IMG/VR virus record: IMGVR_UViG_3300045996_002337
Span: 186,001-250,000 of that record
Direction: 5' to 3' (one strand)
DNA length: 64,000 nucleotides
Below the pieces are notes generated by a model. It was not told the origin of the DNA. It ran no database searches and saw only the letters and a list, made by a program, of their open reading frames with translations. Shown here in pieces: positions 5,675-60,466 of the stretch. The position numbers and the translations under genes are program-made. Each line of letters begins with the position of its first letter. The stretch's first letter is position 1.

Positions 5675-5932
5675 TTACTTTGTCTCGACTGTTGTCGAGG
5701 ACTCGGTCGTTGAAGAAGCTGGTGCGTCTGGCGATGAAGCTGCAGATGCTGGATCAGCTGGGACTGTTGGTTCAACGGGTGTTGGAGTCGTGATCACTGG
5801 AGCTGGGACCGTTGTAGGGTTCTCAGTAGTGGTCGTCGATTCCGTTTCCGTTGTCGTCGTAGTCTTCTTCTCGCAGGCTGCGAGACCGAGAGTGGCAGCC
5901 GTAATGGCTACAATAGCGATTGCTGTTTTCAT
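5675..5932 (-). CDS. small Thr/Pro-rich lipoprotein
   Basis: Signal peptide with LAAC lipobox. Confidence 0.75.
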   Translation of the reverse strand: MKTAIAIVAITAATLGLAACEKKTTTTTETESTTTTENPTTVPAPVITTPTPVEPTVPADPASAASSPDAPASSTTESSTTVETK

Positions 5933-6020
5933 GGGGGTTTCCTCCTATCAGCGTGTAAAGGGGGTGGAGGGCGCGGTTAAAACTGCGTCACGCCCACCTC
6001 TAGCATCGAACGAAGGGGTT

Positions 6021-6425
6021 TTACTCGCGAACCCACTTACCTTGCTTCTTGACAACGGTCGTTGTTTCAACCTTGTCACCAGCAGTTACGGTAACTTCCT
6101 TCTTGTCTGCGCCAACTTCCTTGACTTCAGACGTCATTTGAACGCCCTTAGCCGAGGTCCACGACTGAGTCGTGTTGGTTTCGACAGATTTGACAACCAT
6201 CGAGTGATCGTGCTTGTCCATGTGCTTACCAACTGCACCGCCGACAAGAGCACCACCGAGGGTACCAATTACGCCACCAGCGATTGCGCCAGTACCGGAA
6301 CCAATTGCGGCTCCAGCTACGCCGCCGACCATCGCGCCGACGAGCATACCAGTTTGCTGGTGCGTTGCGCAACCAGTTGCGAGTGCGGCTGCTGCGAGAA
6401 CAGCTCCAAGTTTCATTGTCATCAT
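6021..6425 (-). CDS. glycine-zipper outer-membrane lipoprotein (17 kDa surface-antigen-like)
   Basis: ATGC lipobox; GAMVGGVAGAAIG...GALVGGAVG glycine zipper. Confidence 0.8.
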   Translation of the reverse strand: MMTMKLGAVLAAAALATGCATHQQTGMLVGAMVGGVAGAAIGSGTGAIAGGVIGTLGGALVGGAVGKHMDKHDHSMVVKSVETNTTQSWTSAKGVQMTSEVKEVGADKKEVTVTAGDKVETTTVVKKQGKWVRE

Positions 6426-6572
6426 AATAATTCTCCTTCAAGAATATGTGTACACTTCCCCAAAGGGGACGAACAGCCTATTTAATAGGTCTTGATATCG
6501 CTATGAGGTGTTTCAGGCAAAGGCTTTGTAAAACTTACACTCCCGTGTAAGGGACGTACCAGCCTATGAGGA

Positions 6573-6905
6573 TCATTTTGAAATCCAGATTCCGTTTTCT
6601 TGCCGACAAGCGGTGCCTGTTAACGTTCTTCCACCATAGATGGCGCGGAAGTCACGACAATCAAGTTCGCCCTTTTTGAAAGTGCGAGTAGGTGAAACGG
6701 TAAATCGCTTACCGCTTCGTGGATTAACCCAAGACACGGGTTGATTTTCAGAGCCACCTTCAAGGACCTCATTGGCACGAGCATGGTCTGAAGCGTCCAT
6801 CAACGAACCAAAAGAGCCGGAGAGATAACTTGCGGGAATTGTCTGTGGTTGGGTGGCACAGCCCACAAGTGTAATTGCAAGTGCGAGTGCGAGAACCTTC
6901 ATCAA
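6573..6905 (-). CDS. RT0821/Lpp0805-like surface lipoprotein
   Basis: LVGC lipobox; W-x-NP-x-SG...CRDF...GTACRQ-x-x-G-x-W. Confidence 0.7.
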   Translation of the reverse strand: MMKVLALALAITLVGCATQPQTIPASYLSGSFGSLMDASDHARANEVLEGGSENQPVSWVNPRSGKRFTVSPTRTFKKGELDCRDFRAIYGGRTLTGTACRQENGIWISK

Positions 6906-6988
6906 AGACTTCCTCCTTCTAGGTGTCTGAAGTGTTTATTTATAGGAAAAATCTAGAAGCATGGGCGCTAACCCATGCTCTTTGAAGG

Positions 6989-7144
6989 TTACAATCGGAT
7001 TGCACCACTACCGAAAATGAGCCAGAGAACAAGAATCAGCACGATCACACCAACTGGGCCATAACCCCAGTTAGAAGAGTAGCCCCAAGTAGGGAGAGCG
7101 CCAACAAGAAGAAGTACCAGAAGTACGAGTAGAATTGTAGACAT
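6989..7144 (-). CDS. DUF3309-like small membrane protein (51 aa, not in ORF track)
   Basis: MSTILLVLLVLLLVGALPTWGYSSNWGYGPVGVIVLILVLWLIFGSGAIRL; SD AAGGA upstream. Confidence 0.8.
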   Translation of the reverse strand: MSTILLVLLVLLLVGALPTWGYSSNWGYGPVGVIVLILVLWLIFGSGAIRL

Positions 7145-7156
7145 TTCAATTTCCTT

Positions 7157-7969
7157 TCAACGTAATGCGTTAACCTGCTGGAGCAGGCTTTCGTGTTTCG
7201 ACCCTGGTGGTAGCACTCCAAGCAGGTGCATCAAGGTCTGTGCATTATGAGGGGCGTGAGCCCTTCCATCATTATTGAAGAAAATGTAGACTTCTTTGCC
7301 GGCTTCTGCAAGTCGACGAATCATGGCTGCATCGTTCTTCAAGTCTTGGTCTGTGTAGTTACCCCAGTATTTACCGGAGGTTTTTGGCCCGTGTCTGCGA
7401 ATGTAGACAAAATCCGCGGTGTCAGTTGGATCTGTTTCAGTGAAACGGTCTGATGCCACAAGCACTGCGTTGTGACGCTTGAGCTCGTCATACGTCTCCC
7501 GAACAAGCCAAGAGGTGTTGCGCACTTCCAGCGCAAGCTTCAAGCCGCTGGAGTTCAGAAATTCAGCAAGCGGGCCAACTCGATCAAGGAGCTTGCTGCT
7601 CGAGCGCTCTGCGAGCTGCACTAGAACTGGACCTCGTTTGTTGACATCAATCTTGTGAATGCCTTCGACGAAGTACTTCATCAGCTCAATGCCGTCTCTT
7701 GTGTCCCCGTCTGAATGCAGCTTGAGCTGACGCGAATGTGTGAATGACTTTGGCGACTTCAGGACAAGCTTGCTATTTGCATGCATCTTAGCACCCCAAC
7801 GCTCAACTGAATCGGGCTTTGGGATGTTGTAGAAGGACGCGTTAATTTCCAACGTGTTGAAGTGGTCAGCGTAGTACTGGAGCAGATCACCTGTTTTCGG
7901 TGGATAAAATGCTCCATTCTGCCAATGGTGGTACGAGTACCCACTACAACCAATATAAACGTTCTTCAT
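7157..7969 (-). CDS. DUF72 domain protein
   Basis: IGCSGYSYHHW, EINASFY, K-x-PK-x-x-TH, ALEVR-x-x-SW, YIRRHG, YIFFNND...AP-x-NA. Confidence 0.9.
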   Translation of the reverse strand: MKNVYIGCSGYSYHHWQNGAFYPPKTGDLLQYYADHFNTLEINASFYNIPKPDSVERWGAKMHANSKLVLKSPKSFTHSRQLKLHSDGDTRDGIELMKYFVEGIHKIDVNKRGPVLVQLAERSSSKLLDRVGPLAEFLNSSGLKLALEVRNTSWLVRETYDELKRHNAVLVASDRFTETDPTDTADFVYIRRHGPKTSGKYWGNYTDQDLKNDAAMIRRLAEAGKEVYIFFNNDGRAHAPHNAQTLMHLLGVLPPGSKHESLLQQVNALR

Positions 7970-8001
7970 CTGTGCTTCCGAGTCATCGTGGAGTATTTAG
8001 G

Positions 8002-8421
8002 TCACTCTTTATTAGTGAGCGCCTTTTCAACAGCCCTATCTTTTGGAATGACGGCGACACGCGGAAGACGGAGAATGAACGGCCAAATTGCAATTGCAGT
8101 TGCCACGGAGGCAATCGCGGTTGCGGCCTTCACCCAGCCCTGTAGCCAGTAAAGTGGGTACCAGATAACAGCGATATCGACGAGGTGAGTCGTGCCGCAC
8201 AAGAAAATGAAGGCGCAGAAGAGCATGAACACCCAACTTGCAATGATGTCCTTGCGCTTGTCGAGGAGAACAAGCAACGCAACGGGGATGGAATAGTAAG
8301 CAAGGGCGATCAACAGGTCCGAGAGGACCATCAGCAGAACTAGATCGCCGTTCCATTGGAAACAATAGCCATGCGGAAGAAGGCCGTTTCTAGCGACCCA
8401 GTTGACTAGGTTATCACCCAT
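8002..8421 (-). CDS. stand-alone ethylene-receptor-like (ETR1-type) 3-TM sensor domain
   Basis: PHGYC...SDLLIALAYYSIP...FCAFIFLCGTTHL...VKAATAIASVATA; retains the D, Y and C-x3-H residues of ETR1-type domains; no kinase domain. Confidence 0.75.
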   Translation of the reverse strand: MGDNLVNWVARNGLLPHGYCFQWNGDLVLLMVLSDLLIALAYYSIPVALLVLLDKRKDIIASWVFMLFCAFIFLCGTTHLVDIAVIWYPLYWLQGWVKAATAIASVATAIAIWPFILRLPRVAVIPKDRAVEKALTNKE

Positions 8422-8451
8422 GTTATTCTCTCATCGTGTGTGTTGAAAGGT

Positions 8452-9126
8452 TTATTTATGGGGCCAGAGAAGATCAAAGTTTCCCGCCATCACCCTATCA
8501 CAGGCCGCGGATCGCCCAGTTCGATGATCCTTTACAAGATTATCTTGAAAGCGGTACGTTCGAATTTTATCGCCACGTTCGCCACTTCCAACCTGTGCCT
8601 TGCGATCAGCTGCCAGCTCCAGGAGCTGACCATTTCGGGCAACGGAATTCAGGCGCACCATTATTTCTGTTTTGGCTTCGTTCAGAGAATTTTCACGTGA
8701 GCGGCACTGCGCTGTCACAATTTCACTTGATGGAATGTGCGTGATGCGACACGAATTTTGGTGCTTGTTTCTATGCTGGCCTCCAGCACCCGTGCCAGAG
8801 TACCATTCTATCTTGAAGTCACGCTCATTGAAGGTGACTCGTTTGATCTCTCCTGGATGGATGATTGCCACCGTGACGGTCGAGGAGTGTACCCGTCCCC
8901 GTCTCTCGGTTGGCGGTATGCGCTGAATCCGGTGTCCGCCTGGCTCGTTGTTGAGCTCTGACAGATCCTCGCCGGTTACCTCAATGCTGAGTTCGCGAGA
9001 ATCAATCAGGCGGGTAGTTCAGCCGACGCGTTGCGCGTGGGCGATGTAGGCTTTAGCCAGGTCCTTCACGAACAGCTTGCTGTCCTCTCCGCCTTCGGCG
9101 GCTCGAATCTCAATAATGCGTTTCAT
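8452..9126 (-). CDS. RF1-like class-I peptide chain release factor (224 aa) containing an in-frame TGA at codon 36 (9019-9021)
   Basis: SD GGAG and ATG at 9126: MKRIIEIRAAEGGEDSKLFVKDLAKAYIAHAQRVG-TGA-TTRL...GGHRIQRIPPTERRGRVHSSTVTV...GAGGQHRNK...RSRENS...IRTYRF. PxT and GGQ motifs are intact and in one frame. Confidence 0.85.
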
Positions 9127-9138
9127 AACTTCTCCAAA

Positions 9139-9213
9139 TGGCGCCCCTGGCAGGAATCGAACCCACATTCACGCTTTAGAAGAGCGGTGTATTTTCCATT
9201 ATACGACAGGGGC
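9139..9213 (-). tRNA. tRNA-Arg(TCT)
   Basis: Cloverleaf, loop CT-TCT-AA, encoded CCA. Confidence 0.9.
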
Positions 9214-9219
9214 AGAGGT

Positions 9220-9738
9220 TTATTTTAACTCGTTTTTCTTCTCTATCTCAACTATTTGTTCAAGAACTGCGGTTGGGTTTGTTTCATCTGAAAGTCCCTG
9301 TGCTTCCGTGCGGTGTTCTTGTCTAACATCTAACCGCTCAGCTATCTTGTCAAGCAGCCGGAGGATAGCTGTGCTCTCGCGTTCAGCCAGCAGGTTAATT
9401 TGCAGGTCGAGTTTGTGTCGCTTGTCTGCTTCTTCAGCTAGACGATTCTGACTCAACAAAAGGAAACCAGAAAGGAGAATGGCCTCGAGCGAGACGAGTG
9501 TCGTGAGCAGGGTAAATGGGAACGGATCAAACTGCCATACAGTCAAATTAAGGGTTGTCCAGCCAATGAAGATGGCTAGATGAACGGCGATGAAGCTGAC
9601 GGTGCCAGCCCATTGTGCCACAGTATGTGCCACTTTTTCCGGGATGGATTGTTTCTTGAGCTGATCTTGCTCGTGCACAAAGATCGCCTCGATGTTCTCG
9701 TGGGTGATCTGCACTGGGTCATTAGGTGCTTCATTCAT
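9220..9738 (-). CDS. DUF1003 family membrane protein
   Basis: FDPFPFTLLTTLVSLEAILLSGFLLLSQNR...DLQINLLAE-x-E motif. Confidence 0.9.
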   Translation of the reverse strand: MNEAPNDPVQITHENIEAIFVHEQDQLKKQSIPEKVAHTVAQWAGTVSFIAVHLAIFIGWTTLNLTVWQFDPFPFTLLTTLVSLEAILLSGFLLLSQNRLAEEADKRHKLDLQINLLAERESTAILRLLDKIAERLDVRQEHRTEAQGLSDETNPTAVLEQIVEIEKKNELK

Positions 9739-9752
9739 GCACCTATTTATGT

Positions 9753-9879
9753 TGGTGGTGGCGGAAGGAATCGAACCTCCCCTGGCCGTTTATGAGTCGG
9801 ATAACCAATTACGGACGGTTGAGCTAACAACGAAAGGTGCAATCGATGTTTACCGTGCTGTCCACTACACTACGCCACC
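9753..9879 (-). ncRNA. tRNA/Y-RNA hybrid: tRNA acceptor, D and T arms with CCA, and a ~50-nt Ro60-helix-like domain in place of the anticodon arm
   Basis: GGTGGCG/CGCCACC-A-CCA, D arm, T loop TTCGATT; insert contains TCG-TTG[TTAGCT]CAA-C-CG and GGTTATCC/GATTGC, shared with the Y-like family. Confidence 0.6.
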
Positions 9880-9884
9880 ATGTT

Positions 9885-9956
9885 TGGAACCGCGGATGGG
9901 ATTCGAACCCACACATCAATCCTTCGGAGGGATCGTGCCGTTCCACCGGCCGCGGT
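9885..9956 (-). tRNA. tRNA-Arg(CCG)
   Basis: Cloverleaf with weak D arm, CT-CCG-AA, CCA. Confidence 0.8.
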
Positions 9957-9957
9957 A

Positions 9958-10033
9958 TGGTGCTCTCGTCCAGGCTCGAACTGGATCCTCCGGATTACGA
10001 AACCGGCATACCACCATGTAATACTTCGAGAGC
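9958..10033 (-). tRNA. tRNA-Thr(CGT)
   Basis: TT-CGT-AA loop, CCA. Confidence 0.8.
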
Positions 10034-10099
10034 ATAGCCTAGATTCGATGTGAGCAGTTTCTACTCAAGTCATCAGTCTCTAGGCGGGACTTTAATTGA

Positions 10100-10181
10100 T
10101 CTGAACAAAGCCTTGCGGCGGCGCGGTCGAGGGCGAGTTCAAGTAAAAGTTGATAACCCTGCGGGTGCGATCCGGTTCAGA
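10100..10181 (-). ncRNA. Y-RNA-like small RNA (no tRNA module)
   Basis: TCTGAA-C-CG...GGTTATC...pyrimidine-rich loop...GCC-GCAA-GGC-TTTG-TTCAGA; homologous to 13170..13248. Confidence 0.6.
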
Positions 10182-10193
10182 AATTTTGTGTGT

Positions 10194-10418
10194 TCAAACA
10201 GCTTCGAGACCCTTTGCGTTGACCTCGAGCTGTTTTCGGATGTACCGCATGAAGAGCATGGCCTTGTCTTCCGCAAGGAAGACACCATCACCACAGTCTT
10301 CGACAGGCACGACGAAGTCAAAGCCGTCGTCAGTCCGGTAGTGAAGCTCGTTCTTGCGATACATCATGAAGCGGACCCGTTTTCCAGGTCCGACAAGTTC
10401 TTTCAGAGTGCTCATCAC
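10194..10418 (-). CDS. hypothetical protein
   Basis: 74-aa ORF coupled to 10415..10771. Confidence 0.65.
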   Translation of the reverse strand: MMSTLKELVGPGKRVRFMMYRKNELHYRTDDGFDFVVPVEDCGDGVFLAEDKAMLFMRYIRKQLEVNAKGLEAV

Positions 10419-10771
10419 ACCGTGTCTCCAATAAGATGGGGCGCGAGGTCTGGTCGATCAGGGTACTTCGCATCGATGGCATCGATCGCAAGGTGGGGCG
10501 ACGTGCCTCGATCCAGTTCGTGGATCTTGGAGAAGCCATTTTCCTTCGTGATTAGTGACTCGTGAGGCGAGATGCCGCCACGATACTTGCCATCACCCTT
10601 CTTGTGCATGAGGTTGCCAGTTGCTGGGTCGATCGAGCCCCACTTTGGCGTGTGCTCGGTCTCGATCGGCTCGACGTAGTACGTCTTGCCGGTGCGATAG
10701 GAGTAGACGATGAACCTGCCCGTGTCGTCGGTGCGACGCAGAAACGCGGAATGTACTTCACGGCTGATCAT
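10415..10771 (-). CDS. hypothetical protein
   Basis: 118-aa ORF with good SD. Confidence 0.7.
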   Translation of the reverse strand: MISREVHSAFLRRTDDTGRFIVYSYRTGKTYYVEPIETEHTPKWGSIDPATGNLMHKKGDGKYRGGISPHESLITKENGFSKIHELDRGTSPHLAIDAIDAKYPDRPDLAPHLIGDTV

Positions 10772-10810
10772 CTTCTTTCTCCTTAAGGGTTATGAGCACT
10801 ATTGCTCGGG

Positions 10811-11146
10811 TTAATTTTTCTCGAATTTGGCTTTGAGCCGCTGATACTGAGCAAGTTCGGCTTCTTTCTTTTCCTTGCGTTGTTGCTTCTTGCGCTCCTT
10901 TGCAAGGAGCTCGATGCGTTCCATCAGTTCAGTATGAGCAGCCTCGGACGCAATGCGATCAGCTTCTTGCGCATCGGTTTCAAGCCGTTGATAGACCAAA
11001 TAGATTTCGTTATCGTAGTAGCCGTGCCCCCTCTGGATGACAGCCGACTCAATTTCTTCTGGAGACAAGTTCGCGAGCAAGTCGCTCAAGCGATGCTGAT
11101 TAGTGATTTCAAAGAGTTGAAAGGTTTCGGTAATCTTTTGCTTCAT
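10811..11146 (-). CDS. hypothetical protein (coiled-coil C-terminus)
   Basis: 111-aa ORF, SD GAGG. Confidence 0.65.
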   Translation of the reverse strand: MKQKITETFQLFEITNQHRLSDLLANLSPEEIESAVIQRGHGYYDNEIYLVYQRLETDAQEADRIASEAAHTELMERIELLAKERKKQQRKEKKEAELAQYQRLKAKFEKN

Positions 11147-11164
11147 AAAAACCTCTGTTTATTG

Positions 11165-11238
11165 TGGTGCTCAATGAAGGAATTGAACCTTCTCTTCATC
11201 CTTACCAAAGATGCGTACTGCCATTATACGAAGAGAGC
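11165..11238 (-). tRNA. tRNA-Thr(GGT)
   Basis: TT-GGT-AA; two acceptor mismatches; CCA. Confidence 0.8.
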
Positions 11239-11244
11239 ATGGAT

Positions 11245-11319
11245 TGGTGGTGATGGTGGGAATCGGACCCACGACACAGAGCTTATGAGACTCCTGCTTA
11301 ACCATTCAGCTTCATCACC
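11245..11319 (-). tRNA. tRNA-Met/Ile2(CAT)
   Basis: CT-CAT-AA; CCA. Confidence 0.8.
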
Positions 11320-11324
11320 ATGTT

Positions 11325-11397
11325 TGGCAAGCCTCCATGGATTTTAACCACGACCTCCGTTCGCGACACGGCGCACTGACAATTGTGCTAAAGACTT
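11325..11397 (-). tRNA. degenerate tRNA, anticodon CGC (Ala?)
   Basis: Cloverleaf with GT-CGC-GA loop, atypical T loop TTAAAAT, lacks the usual Ala acceptor sequence; CCA. Confidence 0.5.
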
Positions 11398-11403
11398 ATT
11401 GTT

Positions 11404-11479
11404 TGGCAACCCCGGTCAGACTCGAACTGACGCCCTTCGCGCTCAGAACGCGACGCTCTACCAACTAAGCTACGAGGCA
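11404..11479 (-). tRNA. tRNA-Gln(CTG)
   Basis: TT-CTG-AG, weak 1:72 pair, G73, CCA. Confidence 0.85.
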
Positions 11480-11488
11480 ACTGATTTT

Positions 11489-11562
11489 TGGCGATCCGTA
11501 GGGGAATCGAACCCCTTTCTTACGCTAGACAGGCGTAGATAATACCAATATATGAACGGACC
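11489..11562 (-). tRNA. tRNA-Asp(GTC)
   Basis: CT-GTC-TA, G73, CCA. Confidence 0.85.
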
Positions 11563-11567
11563 ATGTT

Positions 11568-11642
11568 TGGTGCCTGAGAAAGGAATCGAACCTTAGGTCT
11601 ACCGCTTATCAAGCGGGTGCTCTACCATTGAGCTACTCAGGC
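11568..11642 (-). tRNA. tRNA-Ile(GAT)
   Basis: TT-GAT-AA, CCA. Confidence 0.9.
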
Positions 11643-12012
11643 GTTTTTTGTTTCCTTTGCCACCTTTGGATGAGGCGGCACGGTGCATTTCCTTCCATCG
11701 CTCTTCACCGTATTTCGCGACGTTTTTCGCATATTGCGACGACCATGTTCCCGCTGCTTTTTGATCAAACAGATTGTCACTGGGCGTTCCCCAATACAGA
11801 TGTTTAGGGTTTGAACACGCGTGAACATTACACGCGTGGCACAGAAGGATCTTCATGCCTGCAGGAATTGTCGTTTTAAGCGTGTGAGCTAAAAGACCTC
11901 GATAATGACGGCTGTCCGCTCCTCCAATGAGAATACAGGGCTCAGTCAAATCTAAATGCGCAATACGTTCTGCCCGAGAGCGCTGTATATAGGCTTCAAT
12001 GTCTTCAAACAT
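11599..12012 (-). mobile_element. free-standing HNH (His-Me finger) homing-endonuclease-like gene inside the tRNA array
   Basis: LLCHACNVHACSNPKHLYWGTPSDN motif; own TATAAT promoter near 12019; stop codon lies inside tRNA-Ile. Confidence 0.7.
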
Positions 12013-12032
12013 GATGCATTATAACACAAATT

Positions 12033-12107
12033 TGGTACTCCTGACGGGTTTCGATCCCGCTTCTCAACCTTGAAAGGGTCGTGTCCTAGCCACTAGACGA
12101 CAGGAGT
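12033..12107 (-). tRNA. tRNA-Glu(TTC)
   Basis: CT-TTC-AA, CCA. Confidence 0.85.
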
Positions 12108-12109
12108 AT

Positions 12110-12183
12110 TGGTACCTGCAGAAGGAATCGAACCTTCTTCTCAACGATGTCAACGTCGCGCTCTACCATTGAGCTATGCGGGT
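12110..12183 (-). tRNA. tRNA-Val(GAC)
   Basis: TT-GAC-AT, CCA. Confidence 0.9.
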
Positions 12184-12189
12184 GATGTT

Positions 12190-12264
12190 TGGCGCCGACG
12201 ACGGGACTCGAACCCGCCTAAACCTCATAGACAGTGAGGTGTTCTCCCTGAGAACTACGTCGGC
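12190..12264 (-). tRNA. tRNA-Asp(GTC)
   Basis: CT-GTC-TA, G73, CCA. Confidence 0.85.
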
Positions 12265-12270
12265 AATGTT

Positions 12271-12346
12271 TGGCAAGGGAGGTGGGACTCGAACCCACAA
12301 CAGGCGCATTCAAAGTGCGGTGCTCTACCAATTGAGCTACTCCCCA
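12271..12346 (-). tRNA. tRNA-Gln(TTG)
   Basis: CT-TTG-AA, CCA. Confidence 0.9.
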
Positions 12347-12366
12347 ACAGAAATTTATGTCTTAAG

Positions 12367-12448
12367 CTCCACGATCTGGGCTCGAACCAGACTTGATCTT
12401 TCGATCGCGGATTAACAGTCCGCTGCCACACCCGGCGGCTCTCGTGGA
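12367..12448 (-). tRNA. tRNA-Asn(GTT)-like with long variable arm, no encoded CCA, flanks extend the acceptor stem
   Basis: GCGGA-CTGTTAA-TCCGC; GATC-GAAA-GATC variable arm; CTTAAGCTCCACGA/TCGTGGAGCTTAAG 14-bp stem. Confidence 0.65.
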
Positions 12449-12476
12449 GCTTAAGACACTTACATAATGTTCTTTG

Positions 12477-12548
12477 CTCCAGAGGCAGGGATCGAACCTA
12501 CGACGGACGCATTAACAGTGCGCTGCTCTACCGCTGAGCTACACTGGA
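12477..12548 (-). tRNA. tRNA-Asn(GTT), no encoded CCA
   Basis: Canonical cloverleaf; leader TGTTCTTTGC pairs with trailer GCAAAGAACA. Confidence 0.85.
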
Positions 12549-12577
12549 GCAAAGAACACGTTTCAAAAATACTTAGG

Positions 12578-12651
12578 AGTGACCAGAGGGACTTGAACCC
12601 TCATTATCTGCATTCACAGTGCAGCGCGTCTACCAATTCCGCCATGGCCAC
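12578..12651 (-). tRNA. tRNA-His(GTG), no encoded CCA
   Basis: CT-GTG-AA; leader ACTTAGG pairs with trailer CCTAAGT; C at -1 and T73 are atypical. Confidence 0.75.
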
Positions 12652-12668
12652 GCCTAAGTATTCTTACT

Positions 12669-12744
12669 TGGTACGTCTGAGAGGATTCGAACCTCCAACC
12701 TGAGCCTTCGTAGGACCCTGCTCTTCCAGTTGAGCTACAGACGT
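12669..12744 (-). tRNA. tRNA-Arg(ACG)
   Basis: CT-ACG-AA, CCA. Confidence 0.9.
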
Positions 12745-12750
12745 ATTGTT

Positions 12751-12826
12751 TGGTAGGGGCACAGGGATTCGAACCCTGACTTGACGGATTAAAAGTCCGC
12801 TGTGATAACCATTTCACCATACCCCC
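12751..12826 (-). tRNA. tRNA-Lys(TTT)
   Basis: CT-TTT-AA, CCA. Confidence 0.85.
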
Positions 12827-12841
12827 GTTAGGAGGTACGTT

Positions 12842-12887
12842 TGGCAGACGCGCTAGGCGTCGAAGACATTTGTCGCATTGCGCGTCC
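12842..12887 (-). ncRNA. 46-nt mini-tRNA-like element
   Basis: GGACGCG...CGCGTCT-G-CCA acceptor stem enclosing a small GACA-AA-TGTC hairpin. Confidence 0.4.
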
Positions 12888-12900
12888 TTTCTTTGTTGAT

Positions 12901-12972
12901 TGGCATCCCGTCAGAGAGTCGAACTCTGTCCATGCGTTTTGGAGACGACAGGCCCTAGCCGTAGGCCGAGAT
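12901..12972 (-). tRNA. degenerate tRNA-Trp(CCA)
   Basis: CT-CCA-AA loop, intact T arm and CCA, irregular D arm and anticodon stem. Confidence 0.6.
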
Positions 12973-12984
12973 ATTAACTTGATT

Positions 12985-13078
12985 TGGCTCCCTCGGACGG
13001 ACTCGAACCGCCATATTACGCCTTACGGCCTTTACGTCTGATTAACAGTCAGGTCTCTTACCATTAGAGTACAAGGGA
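12985..13078 (-). tRNA. tRNA-Asn(GTT) with 24-nt variable region
   Basis: CT-GTT-AA; variable arm GCC-GTAA-GGC; G73; CCA. Confidence 0.8.
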
Positions 13079-13086
13079 ATAGAACT

Positions 13087-13161
13087 TGGTGCGCCTCCCC
13101 AGAATCGAACTGGGCTCTCTCCGGTTAAGAGCCGGGACTTCGCCAGCAAAGTTTGAGACGC
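13087..13161 (-). tRNA. tRNA-Lys(CTT)
   Basis: CT-CTT-AA, CCA. Confidence 0.8.
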
Positions 13162-13169
13162 GAAGAAAG

Positions 13170-13248
13170 TCTGAACAAAAGCCTTGCGGCGTGCGGTCTC
13201 AAGGAGGTTCAATAAAAGTGATAACCTTGAAGTTGCGAGCGGTTCAGA
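13170..13248 (-). ncRNA. Y-RNA-like small RNA (no tRNA module)
   Basis: TCTGAA-C-CG...GGTTATC-ACTTTTA...GCC-GCAA-GGC-TTTTG-TTCAGA; homolog of 10100..10181. Confidence 0.6.
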
Positions 13249-13253
13249 TTGTT

Positions 13254-13328
13254 TGGCGCTCCGTAGGGGTTACGATCCCCTCTAGCCAGGTTGAAAGCCT
13301 GGTGACCTCACCAGATGTCTAACGGAGC
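13254..13328 (-). tRNA. tRNA-Glu(TTC)
   Basis: CT-TTC-AA, CCA. Confidence 0.85.
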
Positions 13329-13334
13329 ATTGTT

Positions 13335-13410
13335 TGGTGGGCCCTCACGGAATCGAACCGTGTCCTTCGGAGCTTCAATCCGACGTACGCACCAGCTATA
13401 CCAAAGACCC
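13335..13410 (-). tRNA. tRNA-Phe(GAA)
   Basis: TT-GAA-GC, CCA. Confidence 0.85.
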
Positions 13411-13418
13411 ATAAATTT

Positions 13419-13494
13419 TGGCTGGCCACCGCGGTCTCGAACCGCGAACCCCTGGTTTTGGAGACCAGTGCTCTGCCAATTGAGCTAGTGACCA
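13419..13494 (-). tRNA. tRNA-Trp(CCA)
   Basis: CT-CCA-AA, G73, CCA. Confidence 0.9.
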
Positions 13495-55166: not shown

Positions 55167-55243
55167 TGGTGCCCAAGGTCGGACTCGAACCGACAGATTG
55201 CAGGTTTTGAATCTGCTGCCTATACCAATTCGGCTACTTGGGC
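55167..55243 (-). tRNA. tRNA-Leu(CAA) with short variable arm
   Basis: TT-CAA-AA, A73, CCA. Confidence 0.75.
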
Positions 55244-55390
55244 AGTATTTAATTGACACCTTTCGTTTCGTAGCCAAATTACGAGAACCTTCTCCAGTCA
55301 AGGGAGCGTTTGTCGTAAAATCAAACCACGGTCTCGAAGAAGCAAGGTGCGTTCCGAGGCGACTAACTCTCAGTAGCACGTGTCAAAACT

Positions 55391-55484
55391 TGGCGGTGAC
55401 GATGGGATTCGAACCCATGGAGCCCGATGAAGGACCCTCTTCCTTAGCAGGGAAGTGCAATAAACCTGGCTCTGCCACGTCACC
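55391..55484 (-). tRNA. tRNA-Ser(GCT)
   Basis: CT-GCT-AA, long variable arm, G73, CCA. Confidence 0.9.
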
Positions 55485-55696
55485 ATAAATTCTTGCGCGC
55501 TGGTATTCGTTGCAGAACGACTTGTAGCTTTCACCTACCAGCAAGATCCAGTTGCACACCGTCAGCCACTGGCAATCTCCACCTCCGCACTCTTAAGGGC
55601 CGCTGAGGTCTCCCTAGCCTTCTTAACGAATCAGACCAAAACGTTCCTTTAGAGTCAAGGACAACTACCACATAGACGCTGTGGCCTCGCGAATTC

Positions 55697-55783
55697 TGGA
55701 GGAGAATAACGGAATCGAACCGTCACCTGTAAACAAATGGGCTGGCTTTCGAAACCAGTTACGCGCCATGCGTCCTATTCTCC
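55697..55783 (-). tRNA. tRNA-Ser(CGA)
   Basis: TT-CGA-AA, long variable arm, CCA; 5' part overlaps the NADAR stop. Confidence 0.8.
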
Positions 55784-56211
55784 ATGACTAACTTCCAGAG
55801 ATCAGCTCGAATTTCCATCAGCATGATCCCCAGCCTGTTCTTTCCAACACCTCGGCAAACTCCCCAGTACGTGTCGTTCCAGTGGTTAGTTTCCTCGATG
55901 TAAGCATCTCCTGTTGCCAAGAGCTGCGTCATAAACGGTTCCTGTGAGAACTTCTGGATCAAGAGGTCTCTCATGACGTCCTCTTTGATCTGTTCCCAAT
56001 CTTCTCGAATCTGAATCACGCGACCAAACTTCTTTGCCTCTGCGCCAGAAGCCGCCCTTGCGATCTTCTTTCTAAGCTCAATGTCAAGCGTCTTTGCCGC
56101 CTGGTATGCGTGTTCAGTGGATGGAAACGCGACGCCTTCAAACTGGACCCATACGGACCAAAAGTTTGACAGGAACCTATGGTCTCCGCTAAATCCCTTG
56201 ATCTCGTCCAT
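55759..56211 (-). CDS. NADAR (YbiA/DUF1768) family protein
   Basis: FLSNF...STEHAYQAAK...KFSQ...LLATG...E-x-x-x-W-x-D-x-YWG...GKNRLG-x-x-LME-x-R. Confidence 0.92.
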   Translation of the reverse strand: MDEIKGFSGDHRFLSNFWSVWVQFEGVAFPSTEHAYQAAKTLDIELRKKIARAASGAEAKKFGRVIQIREDWEQIKEDVMRDLLIQKFSQEPFMTQLLATGDAYIEETNHWNDTYWGVCRGVGKNRLGIMLMEIRADLWKLVMENRTHGA

Positions 56212-56224
56212 CTTAGTTTCCTAT

Positions 56225-56332
56225 TGGCTCCCCAACCTGGGCTCGAACCAGGGACCTGCGGATTAACTAGAACACCCGATAAACCAGATGTTCGGTGTCA
56301 GTCCGACGCTCTACCAACTGAGCTATTGGGGA
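56225..56332 (-). tRNA. tRNA-Asn(GTT) interrupted by a 32-nt insertion in the anticodon loop
   Basis: Canonical Asn body; loop reads CTG[ACACCGAACATCTGGTTTATCGGGTGTTCTAG]TTAA; removing 32 nt restores CT-GTT-AA. Confidence 0.8.
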
Positions 56333-56338
56333 ATTGAT

Positions 56339-56665
56339 TTACCAGCTAACGGTAACGTTTGCGATAAAACCGTTGCGGCTGTTCACCGTTACTGTAAAGC
56401 CATCATTCTGCATGAGAACAACCGCGGCTTGCAGCTGATCGTCAATTTCTTGTTCGGTTAGGTGAAAGATCCCCAGCGCCCCGATTGAAACGTTGACGTT
56501 TAACGTCTTCGTAAACAGCCCAGCTTCAGCAGCATTTGAAACGGCGTTCTCGACGCTTCCATAGAAGCTGTTCATGACTTCAGCCTTCGTTGCGTCCTTA
56601 GCTTCAGGCGTGGTCAGAAGTGCAAGCTGTTCAACAGCGCGGGCATTAGCATCACTTGCTAGCAT
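56339..56665 (-). CDS. hypothetical protein
   Basis: 108-aa ORF, SD AAGGA. Confidence 0.65.
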   Translation of the reverse strand: MLASDANARAVEQLALLTTPEAKDATKAEVMNSFYGSVENAVSNAAEAGLFTKTLNVNVSIGALGIFHLTEQEIDDQLQAAVVLMQNDGFTVTVNSRNGFIANVTVSW

Positions 56666-56679
56666 AACATTTCCTTAAT

Positions 56680-56763
56680 TGGTGCGTACGGGGAGACTCG
56701 AACTCCCAATCCTTTCGGCGCTGGCTTCTAAGACCAGAGTGTATACCATTCCACCACGTACGC
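56680..56763 (-). tRNA. tRNA-Leu(TAG)
   Basis: CT-TAG-AA, variable arm, CCA. Confidence 0.9.
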
Positions 56764-56865
56764 ATTGTTTGGGTGACTAAAAGCCGGTGGGGTATCCGAG
56801 GTCAGGCTTCAACTCCATCCTCTTCCCATCCTCCGTTTACTTTCCTTACTTTCAGTCAGTTGTTT

Positions 56866-56939
56866 TGGTTCCTCTAGGTGGAATTGAACCACCGTCAGCC
56901 CCTTATAAGGAGGCCGCTCTACCATTGAGCTATAGAGGC
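56866..56939 (-). tRNA. tRNA-Ile(TAT)
   Basis: CT-TAT-AA; G1.A72 mismatch; CCA. Confidence 0.8.
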
Positions 56940-56940
56940 A

Positions 56941-57273
56941 TCAGATGGCAAAGCACTCAGCATGAGCTTTCACGTGAGTGAGAACATCACCACGGGCTGC
57001 AAAAACCTTTGTGCTATCATCAAACATCTTGGCATGAACGACCACTTTGCGGGTATTTCCAATGGTCACACCGCGAAACGTCTTGCCTGTAACCGTGATC
57101 TCGCACTCAATGCTGTCGTTGAAATTGTTCTTGATAACGCAGCGACCAGCCGACTTATTCCACAGACACCCTGGAGTAAGCTCAACGAGATCACGTTGTC
57201 GCTCTTGCCCATGTGAGGCAAGTGACATGAAAAGTGCAAATGCACCGATAAAATAAGCAGCAAGTTTCTTCAT
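56941..57273 (-). CDS. hypothetical exported protein
   Basis: Signal peptide, 4 Cys. Confidence 0.65.
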   Translation of the reverse strand: MKKLAAYFIGAFALFMSLASHGQERQRDLVELTPGCLWNKSAGRCVIKNNFNDSIECEITVTGKTFRGVTIGNTRKVVVHAKMFDDSTKVFAARGDVLTHVKAHAECFAI

Positions 57274-57481
57274 GTCAACATCTCCAACGTGGGGTTATTT
57301 GATTTCGTATTTGTCCGTTTTTCGGTATTAGGGTTCAGCGGTAACCCAGGGAATTCTTGATGGGCCAGGGTAAGCATCCATCATGTCCTACTTCGCCCGT
57401 TGCAGCTCCGGCTTTCGCGAGATACTGACGTGTCTAAGGACTTTGCGTCTGTCGGTGCACCGACAGGGTCGCCAAATTAAC

Positions 57482-57618
57482 AAAGCATAGAAACAACAAA
57501 AGGCGCTATCGGGAATTCCTGCCCCTGGACCACCTGCAGGATGCCACGAATCGAACGGGCTTGGGTTTATTTCCAATAATAGTAGATAACCGACAACAAA
57601 CGGTTGATTCTATGCTTT
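57482..57618 (-). ncRNA. Y-RNA-like RNA with degenerate T-loop module
   Basis: AAAGCATAGAA terminal stem; CAA-C-CG / TTG-TTG helix; GTTATC/GATAGC; TTCGATT hairpin. Confidence 0.55.
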
Positions 57619-57864
57619 GCCAACATTGGTGCGGGTGGAGGGACTTGAACCCTCAAAGCCGAAGCTGTCGGATTTTAAGTCCGATGTGGTTACCGATTTC
57701 ACCACACCCGCGCGTGTGATCCCCTCTGTTATCTCTAAAAGAGCGTCGAAACATTTTCCACAATTCATTGCACAGTTCGTTTTCATCATGATCTCTTCCG
57801 TCGTAAGAGGGAGAAGATCACGAATTGTCTGTTCAGAAACTCCAGCACAGATACAAACGATCAT
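57610..57864 (-). CDS. bfd: Bfd-like [2Fe-2S] ferredoxin whose frame runs through tRNA-Leu(TAA)
   Basis: MIVCIC...CGKC motif; own TATAAT promoter at ~57870. Confidence 0.75.
   Translation of the reverse strand: MIVCICAGVSEQTIRDLLPLTTEEIMMKTNCAMNCGKCFDALLEITEGITRAGVVKSVTTSDLKSDSFGFEGSSPSTRTNVGKA
57627..57711 (-). tRNA. tRNA-Leu(TAA)
   Basis: CT-TAA-AA, variable arm, CCA. Confidence 0.9.
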
Positions 57865-57903
57865 GAATCATTATAACACTAGTGGGAGCTAAGTGGAACC
57901 TAT

Positions 57904-58077
57904 TTACCGAAGAGCGATCATGCGCGAACGAAGACGTTCTTCATTGTCATACTCCGAGATCCAAAATTCAATCTCCTGTGGAGATTGCGGGTTCTTCGAA
58001 GCGACGAAACGTTCGAGCGCCGTCATTTGACGGGTGGAGAAAGCCTGCTTAAGCCAAGCGAAAATACGTGAGATCAT
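57904..58077 (-). CDS. small protein, DUF3563-like (57 aa, not in ORF track)
   Basis: MISRIFAWLKQAF...LERFVASKNPQSPQEIEFWISEYD. Confidence 0.5.
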   Translation of the reverse strand: MISRIFAWLKQAFSTRQMTALERFVASKNPQSPQEIEFWISEYDNEERLRSRMIALR

Positions 58078-58318
58078 GGTTCATGATCCTTTCTTTAAAA
58101 AGTTCCTTGTGGGAACGGTTTAGTGAAAGGCAGAACCGACATCCATCGACTACTCTGTTGAGTGATCCGCCATAGCCAACATTATTTACAGGTCTTGCTT
58201 CTTGTTAGGCTCTGTCCGCGCCTTTGCCACCGCGTAAGCGACAAAACGAACAGTAGCAACAAGCGCGATAAGACCCTTCAAAAACTTACTCATACGATCT
58301 TTCTTACAGTGGTGAAAA

Positions 58319-59266: not shown

Positions 59267-59311
59267 GTCATCTCCTTACGATCATCAGATCTATTTAGAA
59301 GATAACGAATT

Positions 59312-59433
59312 TGGAGCGCCGCCGAGGAATCGAACCTCTGATGCCAAGGTTGATCAGACCCAGCCTTATTTCCAACGTGAGTCACATCGATTGCTCGACA
59401 CTCACATGGTGCTACCATTACACCAAACAACGC
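59312..59433 (-). ncRNA. tRNA-like RNA without anticodon (GNRA-capped long arm)
   Basis: Acceptor plus T-CCA, D and T arms; GTGAGT-GTCGA-GCAA-TCGAT-GTG-ACTCAC replaces the anticodon arm; ~36-nt variable region. Confidence 0.6.
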
Positions 59434-59437
59434 ATAA

Positions 59438-59568: not shown

Positions 59569-59760
59569 AATCTTTTCACTCGGCCGGTGCGGTGGCTGAG
59601 GGCTTGGGCCACTTGTTAGGCTCCATTCCCCATGCTGCCCAGCGCTGCGCCCAAGTTGCCCAGTTCGTGGTGTTGTTGCCCGCGCACCGAATCGCACGTA
59701 GGGCCTCTTCCATCGAAGAAGGTTCTGTATTCAGGTCTTCGTTCATGCTGCGTTCCTTAT

Positions 59761-60460: not shown

Positions 60461-60466
60461 ATTGTT

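What the first reader, a model, noticed from the sequence alone, without database searches (positions are those of the whole stretch)
8002..8421. Stand-alone ethylene-receptor-like copper-binding membrane domain in a phage
Seen: a 139-aa, 3-TM protein with SD-x-LIALAY-x-SIP and FIFLCGTTHL, and no GAF or kinase output. Known: in plant ETR1 the equivalent Asp, Tyr and Cys-x3-His residues bind Cu(I) and ethylene, and bacterial homologs are normally fused to histidine kinases. Inference: an output-less sensor could act as a dominant-negative or sink for a host receptor, or pair with a phage membrane partner such as the holin-like proteins.
Basis: partly seen in the sequence, partly recalled or inferred. 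Interest (0 to 1): 0.68.

Follow-up and report, generated by a model that had tools for sequence, protein, structure and literature searches.

The report
Orphan ethylene-receptor sensor domain in jumbo phage
A 350-kb bacteriophage carries a 139-residue membrane protein that is a complete copy of the copper- and ethylene-binding sensor domain of ethylene receptors, without any kinase. Related phages keep it under purifying selection, so it most likely interferes with or taps into a host sensor kinase.

Summary
Window 8002-8421 (minus strand) encodes a 139-aa protein that matches Pfam ETR1_N (PF25487) at E=2e-35 over 93 of 97 profile positions. It has three confidently modelled transmembrane helices. 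It keeps every residue that is invariant in 119 homologues, including Asp35, Cys75, His79 and Lys98.

The record is a 349,660-bp virus record (CheckV 97%) with phage polymerase and virion genes. The window alone holds 47 tRNA genes.

The gene is not a decayed kinase fragment:
- At least five further phage-like lineages carry an orthologue of 149-154 aa in the same gene neighbourhood.
- dN/dS is about 0.1-0.26.
- No kinase remnant lies downstream.

The phage copies form one clade (support 99/93). Their closest cellular relatives are minimal ETR1_N-HisKA-HATPase_c kinases of Roseateles and Paucibacter (55% identity from residue 1).

Bacteria also have stand-alone copies, but these form a separate clade and each sits directly upstream of its own kinase gene. 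The phage genome has no HisKA and no receiver domain.

Best reading: a captured sensor module that pairs in the membrane with a host receptor kinase. A heterodimer model scored 0.71 against 0.00 for the best control. Ligand binding and the host are untested. I rate it a new variant of a known kind.

The parts
8002..8421 (-). Gene for the 139-aa stand-alone ETR1_N (ethylene-binding-domain-like) membrane protein, P0001
   Evidence: ORF and translation. Pfam PF25487 E=2e-35. AF2 model pLDDT 88.
8362..8376 (-). Codons for P16-H17-G18-Y19-C20. This is the extracytoplasmic N-terminal motif; H17 and C20 are invariant in 119 of 119 homologues, and it lies in the predicted dimer interface.
   Evidence: Alignment A2. 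Interface residues 13-22.
8257..8349 (-). TM helix 1 (residues 25-55). Holds Asp35 (8317-8319) and Tyr42.
   Evidence: Codon read directly from the sequence.
8161..8238 (-). TM helix 2 (residues 62-87). Holds Cys75 (8197-8199) and His79 (8185-8187), the Cys-x3-His pair that coordinates Cu(I) in ETR1.
   Evidence: Role of the residues from PMC10266040.
8059..8151 (-). TM helix 3 (residues 91-121). Holds Lys98 (8128-8130), which covaries with Asp35.
   Evidence: Asp25-Lys91 coupling in ETR1 from PMC10266040.
8452..8871 (-). Upstream gene, 30 nt away: RF-1-domain (GGQ) protein of 139 aa. Part of the conserved neighbourhood.
   Evidence: Pfam PF00472 E=1.9e-17. Same neighbour in L002; only a weak 35-aa PCRF fragment is called in L004 and L005.
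7157..7969 (-). Downstream gene, 32 nt away: DUF72 protein of 270 aa. Present at this place in the window and in L018/L019 only.
   Evidence: Pfam PF01904 E=9e-53. L018.
6989..7144 (-). DUF3309 small membrane protein (51 aa). It follows the ETR1_N gene in every related phage contig.
   Evidence: Pfam PF11752 E=1.8e-16..
6957..6980 (-). Terminator-like hairpin (10-bp stem plus T run) just after DUF3309. Likely end of the RF-1 / ETR1_N / DUF72 / DUF3309 transcription unit.
   Evidence: consensus scan only.
9220..9738 (-). DUF1003 membrane protein. Upstream anchor of the conserved module; tRNA-Arg 9139-9213 lies between it and the RF-1 gene.
   Evidence: Pfam PF06210 E=7.5e-27.. Synteny.

Best explanation
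What it is (well supported). It is a complete, selected, output-less copy of the three-helix Cu(I)/ethylene-binding sensor domain (Pfam ETR1_N). An ancestor of a clade of large phages captured it once from the N-terminus of a bacterial ETR1_N-HisKA-HATPase_c sensor kinase, most like those of Sphaerotilaceae (Burkholderiales). The phages have kept it since as a 139-154-aa inner-membrane protein with its N-terminus outside and C-terminus inside. How it most likely works (inferred). During infection it inserts into the host inner membrane and pairs, through the TM1/TM3 and N-terminal Cys20 interface that these domains use to dimerise, with the sensor domain of a host ETR1_N-type kinase or with another membrane kinase. 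Bacterial stand-alone copies appear to do the latter. A hybrid pair has only one kinase arm or none, so host signalling from that receptor would be blocked or rewired. In the two bacteria studied, this receptor type controls biofilm, surface structures and motility. The intact metal site suggests the phage protein still loads Cu(I) and may bind ethylene or a similar small ligand, so the interference could depend on ligand.
For: Identity: PF25487 at 121 bits. All invariant and near-invariant columns of 119 homologues are kept, with C75/H79 and H17/C20 in 119 of 119. AF2 model pLDDT 88 with three long helices. K/R-rich loop 1 and C-tail give N-out/C-in topology.
Selection: orthologues in five further lineages (L002/3, L004/5, L018/19, L020/21, L022) sit in the same DUF1003...ETR1_N...DUF3309 module. 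dN/dS is 0.09-0.26. L018 vs L020 gives pN 0.10 against pS 0.79. L018 vs L019 shows only synonymous changes.
One capture: the phage clade has 99/93 support.
Source: 55% identity to P0122 from residue 1 to 127. P0122 and the Roseateles protein are ETR1_N-HisKA-HATPase_c. The best-likelihood tree joins the phage clade to these kinases (lnL +19.9 over the free search, p-AU 0.87). Gene GC of 0.52 equals the phage's 0.51.
No output of its own: no HisKA, Response_reg or HMA anywhere in the 350-kb genome, and the only HATPase_c is a GyrB-type topoisomerase.
Action in trans is natural: the bacterial stand-alone clade (100/99) always lies directly upstream of, and in two of three cases overlaps, a separate kinase gene that has its own TM helices.
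Pairing: predicted complex of P0001 with the Roseateles sensor domain scored 0.71, best of 3 controls 0.00. That mark was reached by 51 of 78 solved complexes and 2 of 108 mismatched pairs. The runs agree in at least 94% of contacts and the partner pLDDT is at least 76.
Physiology of such receptors: AzoEtr1 binds ethylene and controls biofilm and root colonisation, and needs D35 and C75 (PMC11819568).
Against: No binding of copper, ethylene or any partner was measured.
The host is unknown, so it is unknown whether it has an ETR1_N kinase.
The link to Sphaerotilaceae is the best tree but is not statistically resolved on 108 columns.
A complex-model pass between two homologous dimerising domains shows likeness, not that this pair meets in a cell.
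Kinase dimers are held mainly by their cytoplasmic DHp helices, so a sensor-only protein may compete poorly.
The window's copy has the shortest C-tail of its clade and lacks the coiled-coil-like tail of its relatives.
Some orthologues carry Asn for Asp35 and lack Lys98. In ETR1 that change lowers ethylene affinity about 100-fold (PMC11971883).
Confidence: 0.45

Rival explanations
1. Autonomous phage sensor. The domain binds Cu(I) and ethylene (or another small unsaturated ligand) and passes the signal to a phage-encoded membrane partner, for example the always-nearby DUF3309 protein or DUF1003. This would let the phage tune infection to a plant- or microbe-derived gas.
For: The full ligand-site residue set is kept. 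DUF3309 follows the gene in all six lineages, and DUF1003 lies upstream in every contig that reaches that far (the window, L002, L004, L005, L018, L022). The short intergenic gaps and a terminator-like site after DUF3309 suggest one transcript.
Against: The whole region is syntenic, so adjacency alone is weak evidence. DUF72 is inserted between the two genes in two lineages. Bacterial stand-alone copies have no DUF3309 neighbour. No pairing test was run for DUF3309.
Confidence: 0.2
2. Membrane permeabiliser. As a dimer or oligomer the three-helix protein acts as a holin-like or ion-conducting protein that depolarises or permeabilises the host membrane.
For: It has class-I-holin-like features: small size, three TM helices, N-out/C-in topology and a basic C-tail. 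An unrelated viral contig (L007) has a stand-alone 140-aa ETR1_N gene whose stop overlaps a 69-aa ORF with a hydrophobic C-terminal stretch, directly before phage-lysozyme-like ORFs. A preprint reports that ETR1 and ERS1 dimers are Ca2+-permeable (10.1101/2025.10.20.683334).
Against: In this genome no lysis enzyme is nearby. Of the three muralytic families searched, the only hit (SLT) lies about 98 kb away. Holins do not normally conserve a metal site, yet C75/H79 and H17/C20 are invariant. Foldseek matches to holins are not significant (E 0.26-0.36). The lysozyme matches in L007 are below Pfam's cut-off and are split over two ORFs.
Confidence: 0.12
3. Copper handling. The protein acts as a membrane Cu(I) buffer or acceptor that alters host copper traffic or protects the infected cell from copper stress.
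For: The Cu(I) ligands are intact. In Exilibacterium a SCO1/SenC copper-chaperone gene overlaps the start of a stand-alone ETR1_N gene, which links the family to copper delivery.
Against: One copper per monomer (PMC10266040) gives very little buffering capacity. The phage has no other copper genes found, with no HMA domain. The conserved dimer interface and Asp-Lys signalling pair point to signalling rather than storage.
Confidence: 0.1
4. Non-functional remnant of a captured kinase gene, or a mis-called ORF.
For: It is truncated relative to its nearest cellular kin. It matches no PHROG and no NCBIfam family.
Against: It is conserved as a 139-154-aa ORF across lineages that are only 43-59% identical (one closer pair, L018/L020, is 84%), with dN/dS 0.09-0.26 and all key residues kept. 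There is no kinase remnant downstream. Its GC content matches the phage's.
Confidence: 0.03

Closest known systems
AzoEtr1 of Azospirillum brasilense and SynEtr1 of Synechocystis (bacterial ethylene receptors; PMC11819568, PMC6682694)
   Same: Same N-terminal three-helix ETR1_N domain. The functionally required residues of AzoEtr1 (D35, C75) carry the same numbers here. Proteobacterial type.
   Different: Those are sensor kinases (SynEtr1 also has a phytochrome-like part) with a cognate response regulator. The phage protein stops about 18 residues after TM3, and its genome has no HisKA or receiver domain.
Arabidopsis ETR1 ethylene-binding domain (residues about 1-128)
   Same: Equivalent Asp25/Tyr32/Cys65/His69/Lys91 set, seen here as Asp35/Tyr42/Cys75/His79/Lys98. 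Dimer through the N-terminal Cys region and the TM helices. The Asp-Lys pair covaries here as in the published coupling analysis (PMC10266040).
   Different: ETR1 carries GAF, kinase and receiver domains and signals to CTR1 and EIN2. Residue equivalence with ETR1 itself rests on the Pfam profile, on the AzoEtr1 paper and on my memory of the ETR1 sequence. It was not aligned here.
Minimal ETR1_N-HisKA-HATPase_c kinases of Roseateles cavernae / Paucibacter sp. (L025, L026) and metagenomic P0122
   Same: Closest cellular sequences: 55-60% identity, collinear from residue 1 through TM3. The best tree joins them to the phage clade.
   Different: They continue into a DHp and ATPase core, about 420 aa in all. 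The phage protein does not.
Bacterial stand-alone ETR1_N proteins in split-receptor operons (Micavibrio P0119, Exilibacterium P0045, P0025 and others)
   Same: Same size (130-150 aa), same domain alone, same conserved residues.
   Different: They form a separate clade (100/99). Each of the three examined lies directly upstream of its own HisKA-HATPase_c gene. The phage copies arose independently and have no kinase neighbour.
Phage-encoded host-signalling genes (for example quorum-sensing genes in a Clostridium difficile phage, Hargreaves et al. 2014, as cited in PMC6324907)
   Same: A phage carrying a piece of a bacterial signal-transduction system.
   Different: Those are complete receptors, kinases or synthases. 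Here only the membrane sensor module is kept.

Membership tests
ETR1_N / ethylene-binding domain (Pfam PF25487) | Profile match above the curated cut-off over the whole domain | tested here: met
   121.3 bits against a cut-off of 27, E=2e-35, profile positions 2-94 of 97. 121.9 bits in the genome scan.
ETR1_N / ethylene-binding domain (Pfam PF25487) | Three transmembrane helices, N-terminus outside, C-terminus in the cytoplasm | tested here: met
   AF2 helices 25-55, 62-87 and 91-121, pLDDT 94-98 in the core. Hydropathy peaks agree, and K/R are enriched in loop 1 and the C-tail. Topology is inferred from the positive-inside rule.
ETR1_N / ethylene-binding domain (Pfam PF25487) | Cys-x3-His in helix 2 (Cu(I) ligands; ETR1 Cys65/His69) | tested here: met
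   C75 and H79 are present and invariant in 119 of 119 homologues. Codons checked.
ETR1_N / ethylene-binding domain (Pfam PF25487) | Asp in helix 1 paired with Lys in helix 3 (ETR1 Asp25/Lys91) | tested here: met
   D35 and K98 are present. In A2 there are 113 D/K pairs, and all 5 Asn35 sequences lack Lys98. Fisher p=3e-8, not corrected for relatedness.
ETR1_N / ethylene-binding domain (Pfam PF25487) | Binds Cu(I) and, through it, ethylene with high affinity | not testable with these tools
   Needs a BCA-Cu(I) titration and a [14C]ethylene binding assay, as in PMC10266040 and PMC11819568.
ETR1_N / ethylene-binding domain (Pfam PF25487) | Forms dimers through the N-terminal Cys region and the TM helices | tested here: inconclusive
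   Heterodimer model with the Roseateles sensor domain scored 0.71 against a best control of 0.00. The interface is residues 13-22, TM1 and TM3. This is a model only, and the homodimer was not run.
Ethylene receptor two-component kinases (ETR1 / SynEtr1 / AzoEtr1 type) | Kinase (HisKA/HATPase_c), GAF or other output domain on the same polypeptide | tested here: not met
   ETR1_N is the only Pfam domain above its cut-off (a weak 16.5-bit UCR_Fe-S_N match falls below its 24-bit cut-off). The protein ends at residue 139, and the next gene is DUF72.
Ethylene receptor two-component kinases (ETR1 / SynEtr1 / AzoEtr1 type) | Cognate response regulator encoded with it | tested here: not met
   No Response_reg and no HisKA match anywhere in the 349,660-bp genome.
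Bacterial split receptors (stand-alone ETR1_N plus adjacent kinase gene) | Separate HisKA-HATPase_c gene immediately downstream | tested here: not met
   Downstream genes are DUF72 and DUF3309 in all phage lineages.
Bacterial split receptors (stand-alone ETR1_N plus adjacent kinase gene) | Belongs to the stand-alone clade in the domain tree | tested here: not met
   The phage clade (99/93) and the bacterial stand-alone clade (100/99) are separate.
Class I holins | Small three-TM protein, N-out/C-in, charged C-tail | tested here: met
   These features are generic and not diagnostic.
Class I holins | Encoded next to the endolysin or spanin genes | tested here: not met
   No Phage_lysozyme or Amidase_2 in the genome. 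The only SLT domain is at C1:96343-96483, about 98 kb from the gene. The condition is met only in the unrelated contig L007.

The most novel reading that the evidence does not exclude
A clade of jumbo phages carries a working receptor module for the plant hormone ethylene. It would use it either to read ethylene directly or to switch off the host's ethylene response (biofilm, surface structures, motility) during infection. This would be the first virus-encoded phytohormone-sensing module and a three-way plant-bacterium-phage signalling link.
Probability: 0.2. Interest if true: 0.85.

Novelty: new variant of a known kind. Interest (0 to 1): 0.6.

Why it matters
Ethylene receptors are a classic signalling family, yet their membrane sensor domain still has no solved structure: no PDB chain matched by sequence. 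Their roles in bacteria have only just begun to be studied, in Synechocystis and Azospirillum.

A virus that keeps only the sensor module, under purifying selection and without any output of its own, makes three things possible:
- It is a natural experiment showing that the domain has a function by itself or in trans.
- It is a candidate natural inhibitor or modulator of bacterial ETR1_N kinases.
- It offers a compact 139-aa natural minimal domain for copper and ethylene binding studies and for structure work.

I found no such domain in 50,697 reference phage genomes, none in PHROGs, and no paper on it in the held library.

The finding is tempered in two ways. Stand-alone ETR1_N proteins are common in bacteria, as split receptors. 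And every functional statement here is inferred.

Tried and rejected
- INPHARED phages: megablast of window 6000-12000 and tblastn of the protein found no match.
- PHROGs and NCBIfam: no family for the protein.
- PDB by sequence: only chance hits, E 0.5-0.85.
- IMG/VR with the single protein: nothing. With the alignment: two loci. L006 is a fused ETR1_N-HWE kinase on a 279-kb contig that may be cellular or prophage DNA. L007 is an independent stand-alone copy.
- BFVD fold search: one unnamed 289-aa protein at E=1.8e-4 with 19% identity. The rest, including holins, were not significant.
- The look-up of sequencing runs: only three runs, each holding 5-6% of the words (landfill and wastewater). 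This is too little to name a habitat or show expression.
- Two apparent bacterial 'stand-alone' hits were set aside. P0011 (183 aa) ends inside what reads as the start of a PAS domain, with an unannotated ORF behind it, so it is probably a broken fused gene. P0018 of Methylobacter sits 153 bp from a contig end, beside a transposase.
- The first 100 bases of the genome recur 135 bases before its end, but the ends are not an exact overlap. I make no claim of circularity.
- Carlew et al. 2019 (Ethylene receptors in nonplant species) is not held, so I could not check whether it lists output-less forms.
- Host assignment beyond the domain tree was not attempted.
- DUF3309 as a binding partner was considered, but the single complex job went to the host-kinase pairing.

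Full report
**1. The observation**

Window 8002-8421 holds, on the minus strand, an ATG-started ORF of 139 codons.

Pfam-A gives one strong match, PF25487 'Ethylene receptor 1-like, N-terminal domain'. It scores E=2e-35, 121 bits against a gathering score of 27, and covers profile positions 2-94 of 97. NCBIfam and PHROGs have no family for it.

A hydropathy scan finds three hydrophobic stretches. Lys and Arg are concentrated in loop 1 (K55, R56, K57) and in the C-terminal tail (six K/R). By the positive-inside rule this puts the N-terminus outside and the C-terminus in the cytoplasm.

An AlphaFold2 model built on 119 homologues has mean pLDDT 88 and pTM 0.72. It shows long helices at 25-55, 62-87 and 91-121, a short N-terminal helix and a short C-terminal helix.

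The protein ends about 18 residues after helix 3. The next gene (DUF72, 7157-7969) starts 32 nt after the stop, so there is neither an output domain nor space for a remnant of one.

**2. The replicon**

The window is positions 186001-250000 of a single 349,660-bp virus record that CheckV rates 97% complete. Its large ORFs match these PHROG families:
- DNA polymerase (E=7e-165)
- ribonucleotide reductase
- head decoration protein
- virion structural protein
- tail-fibre proteins

The window alone has 47 tRNA genes. It is therefore a jumbo phage. GC content is 0.51, and the gene's own GC is 0.52.

**3. Is it a real, selected gene?**

A word-indexed search found 154 short homologues. The closest (53-62% identity, 149-154 aa) come from metagenome contigs. 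I fetched their contigs. Five further lineages (L002/L003, L004/L005, L018/L019, L020/L021, L022) carry the gene in the same neighbourhood as the window: DUF1003, then an RF-1/PCRF-type gene or fragment, then ETR1_N, then DUF72 in the window and L018 only, then DUF3309, then small lipoproteins.

Codon-level comparison gives dN/dS of 0.09-0.26 wherever dS can be estimated. For the closest distinct pair, L018 vs L020, pN is 0.10 against a saturated pS of 0.79. L018 and L019 differ only by synonymous changes.

In a careful maximum-likelihood tree the ten phage-type proteins form one clade, with ultrafast bootstrap 99 and SH-aLRT 93.

A gene that keeps its length, its architecture and its key residues across lineages mostly only 43-59% identical in protein is not a decaying fragment.

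**4. Key residues**

These columns are invariant in an alignment of 119 diverse homologues (short proteins plus the N-termini of fused kinases): P16, H17, C20, W23, Y42, F71, I72, C75, H79, W87, Y91 and S105. D35, K98 and several others are above 90%. The phage protein has all of them.

In Arabidopsis ETR1, Cys65 and His69 hold the Cu(I) cofactor. Asp25 is needed for copper and high-affinity ethylene binding and is coupled to Lys91 (PMC10266040). In the Azospirillum receptor AzoEtr1 the corresponding residues are D35 and C75, the same numbers as here. Mutating them abolishes function (PMC11819568).

The Asp-Lys coupling shows in my alignment too. There are 113 D/K pairs, and all five sequences with Asn at position 35 lack Lys98. 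Fisher p is 3e-8, not corrected for relatedness. Three of those five are phage-clade members (P0003, P0006, P0270). Part of the clade may therefore have a lower-affinity site, as the ETR1 D25N mutant does (PMC11971883).

**5. Where it came from, and what is usual**

An exhaustive profile-free search found 8,027 cluster representatives at E<=0.001. Nearly all the best ones are long proteins with the domain at the N-terminus.

Of the best 80, 76 lie in complete ORFs of 275 aa or more and only one complete ORF is short.

The best cellular matches are in Roseateles cavernae and Paucibacter sp. (55%), followed by Methylibium and other Burkholderiales. P0122 and the Roseateles protein are minimal ETR1_N-HisKA-HATPase_c kinases of about 420 aa. 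P0001 aligns with P0122 from residue 1 to 127 at 55% identity.

The quick tree groups the phage clade with these three kinases (SH-aLRT 85). The careful free search placed the phage clade elsewhere with weak support. The tree that holds the two groups together has a log-likelihood 19.9 units higher, with p-AU 0.87.

I conclude that there was one capture from a fused kinase of this type. I treat a Sphaerotilaceae-like donor or host as a lead, not a result.

**6. Stand-alone copies in bacteria are a different thing**

Fifteen short bacterial proteins form a strongly supported clade of their own: 98 in the quick tree, and 100/99 for the eight kept in the careful tree.

In the three contexts I examined (Micavibrio, Exilibacterium, and a 324-kb metagenome contig), the ETR1_N gene is followed at once by a separate HisKA-HATPase_c gene. 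In two of the three the genes overlap by 11-14 nt. In two of the three that kinase has two predicted TM segments of its own flanking a roughly 230-residue extracytoplasmic part; the third shows one. In Exilibacterium a SCO1/SenC copper-chaperone gene overlaps the start of the ETR1_N gene.

These are split receptors. They show that an ETR1_N protein can work in trans on a membrane kinase.

The phage genes have no such neighbour. The whole phage genome has no HisKA, no receiver domain and no HMA copper domain. Its one HATPase_c match is a GyrB-type topoisomerase.

**7. Mechanism**

The evidence fits best a sensor module that acts on a host kinase in the membrane. I asked for one complex prediction: P0001 with residues 27-185 of the Roseateles kinase ORF.
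- The score was 0.71 and the best of three controls was 0.00.
- That mark was reached by 51 of 78 solved complexes and by 2 of 108 mismatched pairs.
- The three runs agree in at least 94% of contacts, and the partner's pLDDT is at least 76.
- The interface is symmetric: TM1 of each chain lies against TM3 of the other, and the N-terminal segments that carry H17 and C20 also touch.

ETR1 dimers are disulfide-linked through N-terminal cysteines and need them for activity (10.1101/2025.10.20.683334). An analogous Cys20 link is therefore plausible, but it is inferred.

As the tool states, a pass between members of a dimerising family shows likeness. It does not show that these two proteins meet.

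A hybrid of a sensor-only protein with a kinase subunit would lack one kinase arm. In AzoEtr1 and SynEtr1 such receptors control biofilm, surface structures and motility (PMC11819568, PMC6682694). A phage could gain from manipulating these traits. That last step is speculation.

**8. Rivals**

(a) A phage-internal sensor that signals to DUF3309 or DUF1003. The adjacency is conserved, but the whole region is syntenic, and DUF72 separates the genes in two lineages.

(b) A holin-like or ion-conducting role. Three observations favour it:
- The topology is holin-like.
- A preprint reports Ca2+ permeability of ETR1 and ERS1 dimers.
- In the unrelated viral contig L007, a stand-alone 140-aa ETR1_N gene overlaps a 69-aa ORF with a hydrophobic C-terminal stretch and directly precedes lysozyme-like ORFs.

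In this genome, however, the only muralytic domain I found among the three families searched is 98 kb away. An invariant metal site is also not a holin trait.

(c) Copper buffering. The ligands are intact, but capacity would be tiny.

(d) A dead remnant. This is effectively excluded (section 3).

**9. Comparison and novelty**

The protein is a member of the ETR1_N domain family. Every sequence-level criterion is met, and ligand binding is untestable here.

It is not a member of the ethylene-receptor kinase family, because output and regulator criteria were tested and not met. It is also not a member of the bacterial split-receptor group, because it has no kinase neighbour and sits in a different clade.

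I found no counterpart in 50,697 reference phage genomes. Apart from this record, only two IMG/VR loci carry the domain, one of them a fused kinase. BFVD holds one weak structural relative. The held library has no paper on a phage-encoded ethylene-binding domain. One relevant review could not be read.

I rate it a new variant of a known kind: an orphan, virus-borne ethylene-receptor sensor domain.

**10. Limits**

- No habitat or expression data could be obtained.
- The host is unknown.
- The tree rests on 108 columns.
- All functional statements are inferences from homology, context and one structure-prediction test.

Noticed in passing
L007:9989-11067 (IMGVR_UViG_3300050821_001115): An unrelated 21.7-kb viral contig has its own stand-alone 140-aa ETR1_N gene (Asn at the Asp35 position; Cys and His kept). 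Its stop overlaps a 69-aa ORF with a hydrophobic C-terminal stretch, and two adjacent ORFs follow that each match half of Pfam Phage_lysozyme below the cut-off. The ETR1_N gene thus sits where a holin would sit. The lysozyme seems split by a stop or frameshift.
   Followed up: partly
L107:4418-5438 (Exilibacterium tricleocarpae): A SCO1/SenC copper-chaperone gene overlaps the start of a stand-alone ETR1_N gene, which in turn overlaps a PAS-HisKA-HATPase_c gene. This looks like an operon that links copper delivery, sensor domain and kinase as three separate proteins.
   Followed up: partly
Alignment A2, columns of P0001 residues 35 and 98: Asp35 and Lys98 covary: 113 D/K pairs, and all five Asn35 sequences have Asp, Leu or Cys instead of Lys98. 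This is natural-sequence support for the Asp25-Lys91 coupling proposed for ETR1. Three of the five are phage-clade proteins.
   Followed up: partly
window 9139-13494 and 55167-63952: There are 47 tRNA genes in 64 kb, all on the minus strand, in two dense arrays. They include three tRNA-Asn, two of unusual length (83 and 94 nt), and a tRNA-Ser with anticodon ACT. The odd ones may carry introns or be miscalls.
   Followed up: no
window 8452-8871 (-): A 139-aa RF-1-domain protein with a GGQ motif lies directly upstream of the ETR1_N gene. Its size suggests a peptidyl-tRNA hydrolase or ArfB-like ribosome-rescue factor (my reading, not tested). One related phage contig (L002) has a PCRF+RF-1 gene at the same place; L004 and L005 have only a weak 35-aa PCRF fragment.
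   Followed up: no
window 5675-7144 (-): A run of small envelope proteins lies downstream: DUF3309 (51 aa), a 17-kDa-antigen-type lipoprotein (110 aa), a glycine-zipper lipoprotein (134 aa) and a Thr/Pro-rich lipoprotein-like ORF (85 aa). Together with DUF1003 and ETR1_N they make a cluster of membrane and envelope genes inside the tRNA region.
   Followed up: partly
window 11599-12012 (-): A 137-aa ORF sits between tRNA genes and overlaps the end of tRNA-Ile. By eye its Cys/His pattern looks like a homing-endonuclease-type insert. It was not scanned against any library.
   Followed up: no
G000:C1 ends: The first 100 bases of the 349,660-bp record recur starting 135 bases before its end, although the ends are not an exact overlap. 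IMG/VR classes the record as linear.
   Followed up: partly
L006:9956-11071 (IMGVR_UViG_3300001199_000001, 279 kb): A 371-aa ETR1_N-HWE_HK fused kinase lies on a contig filed as viral. Whether that stretch is phage, prophage or cellular DNA was not examined.
   Followed up: no
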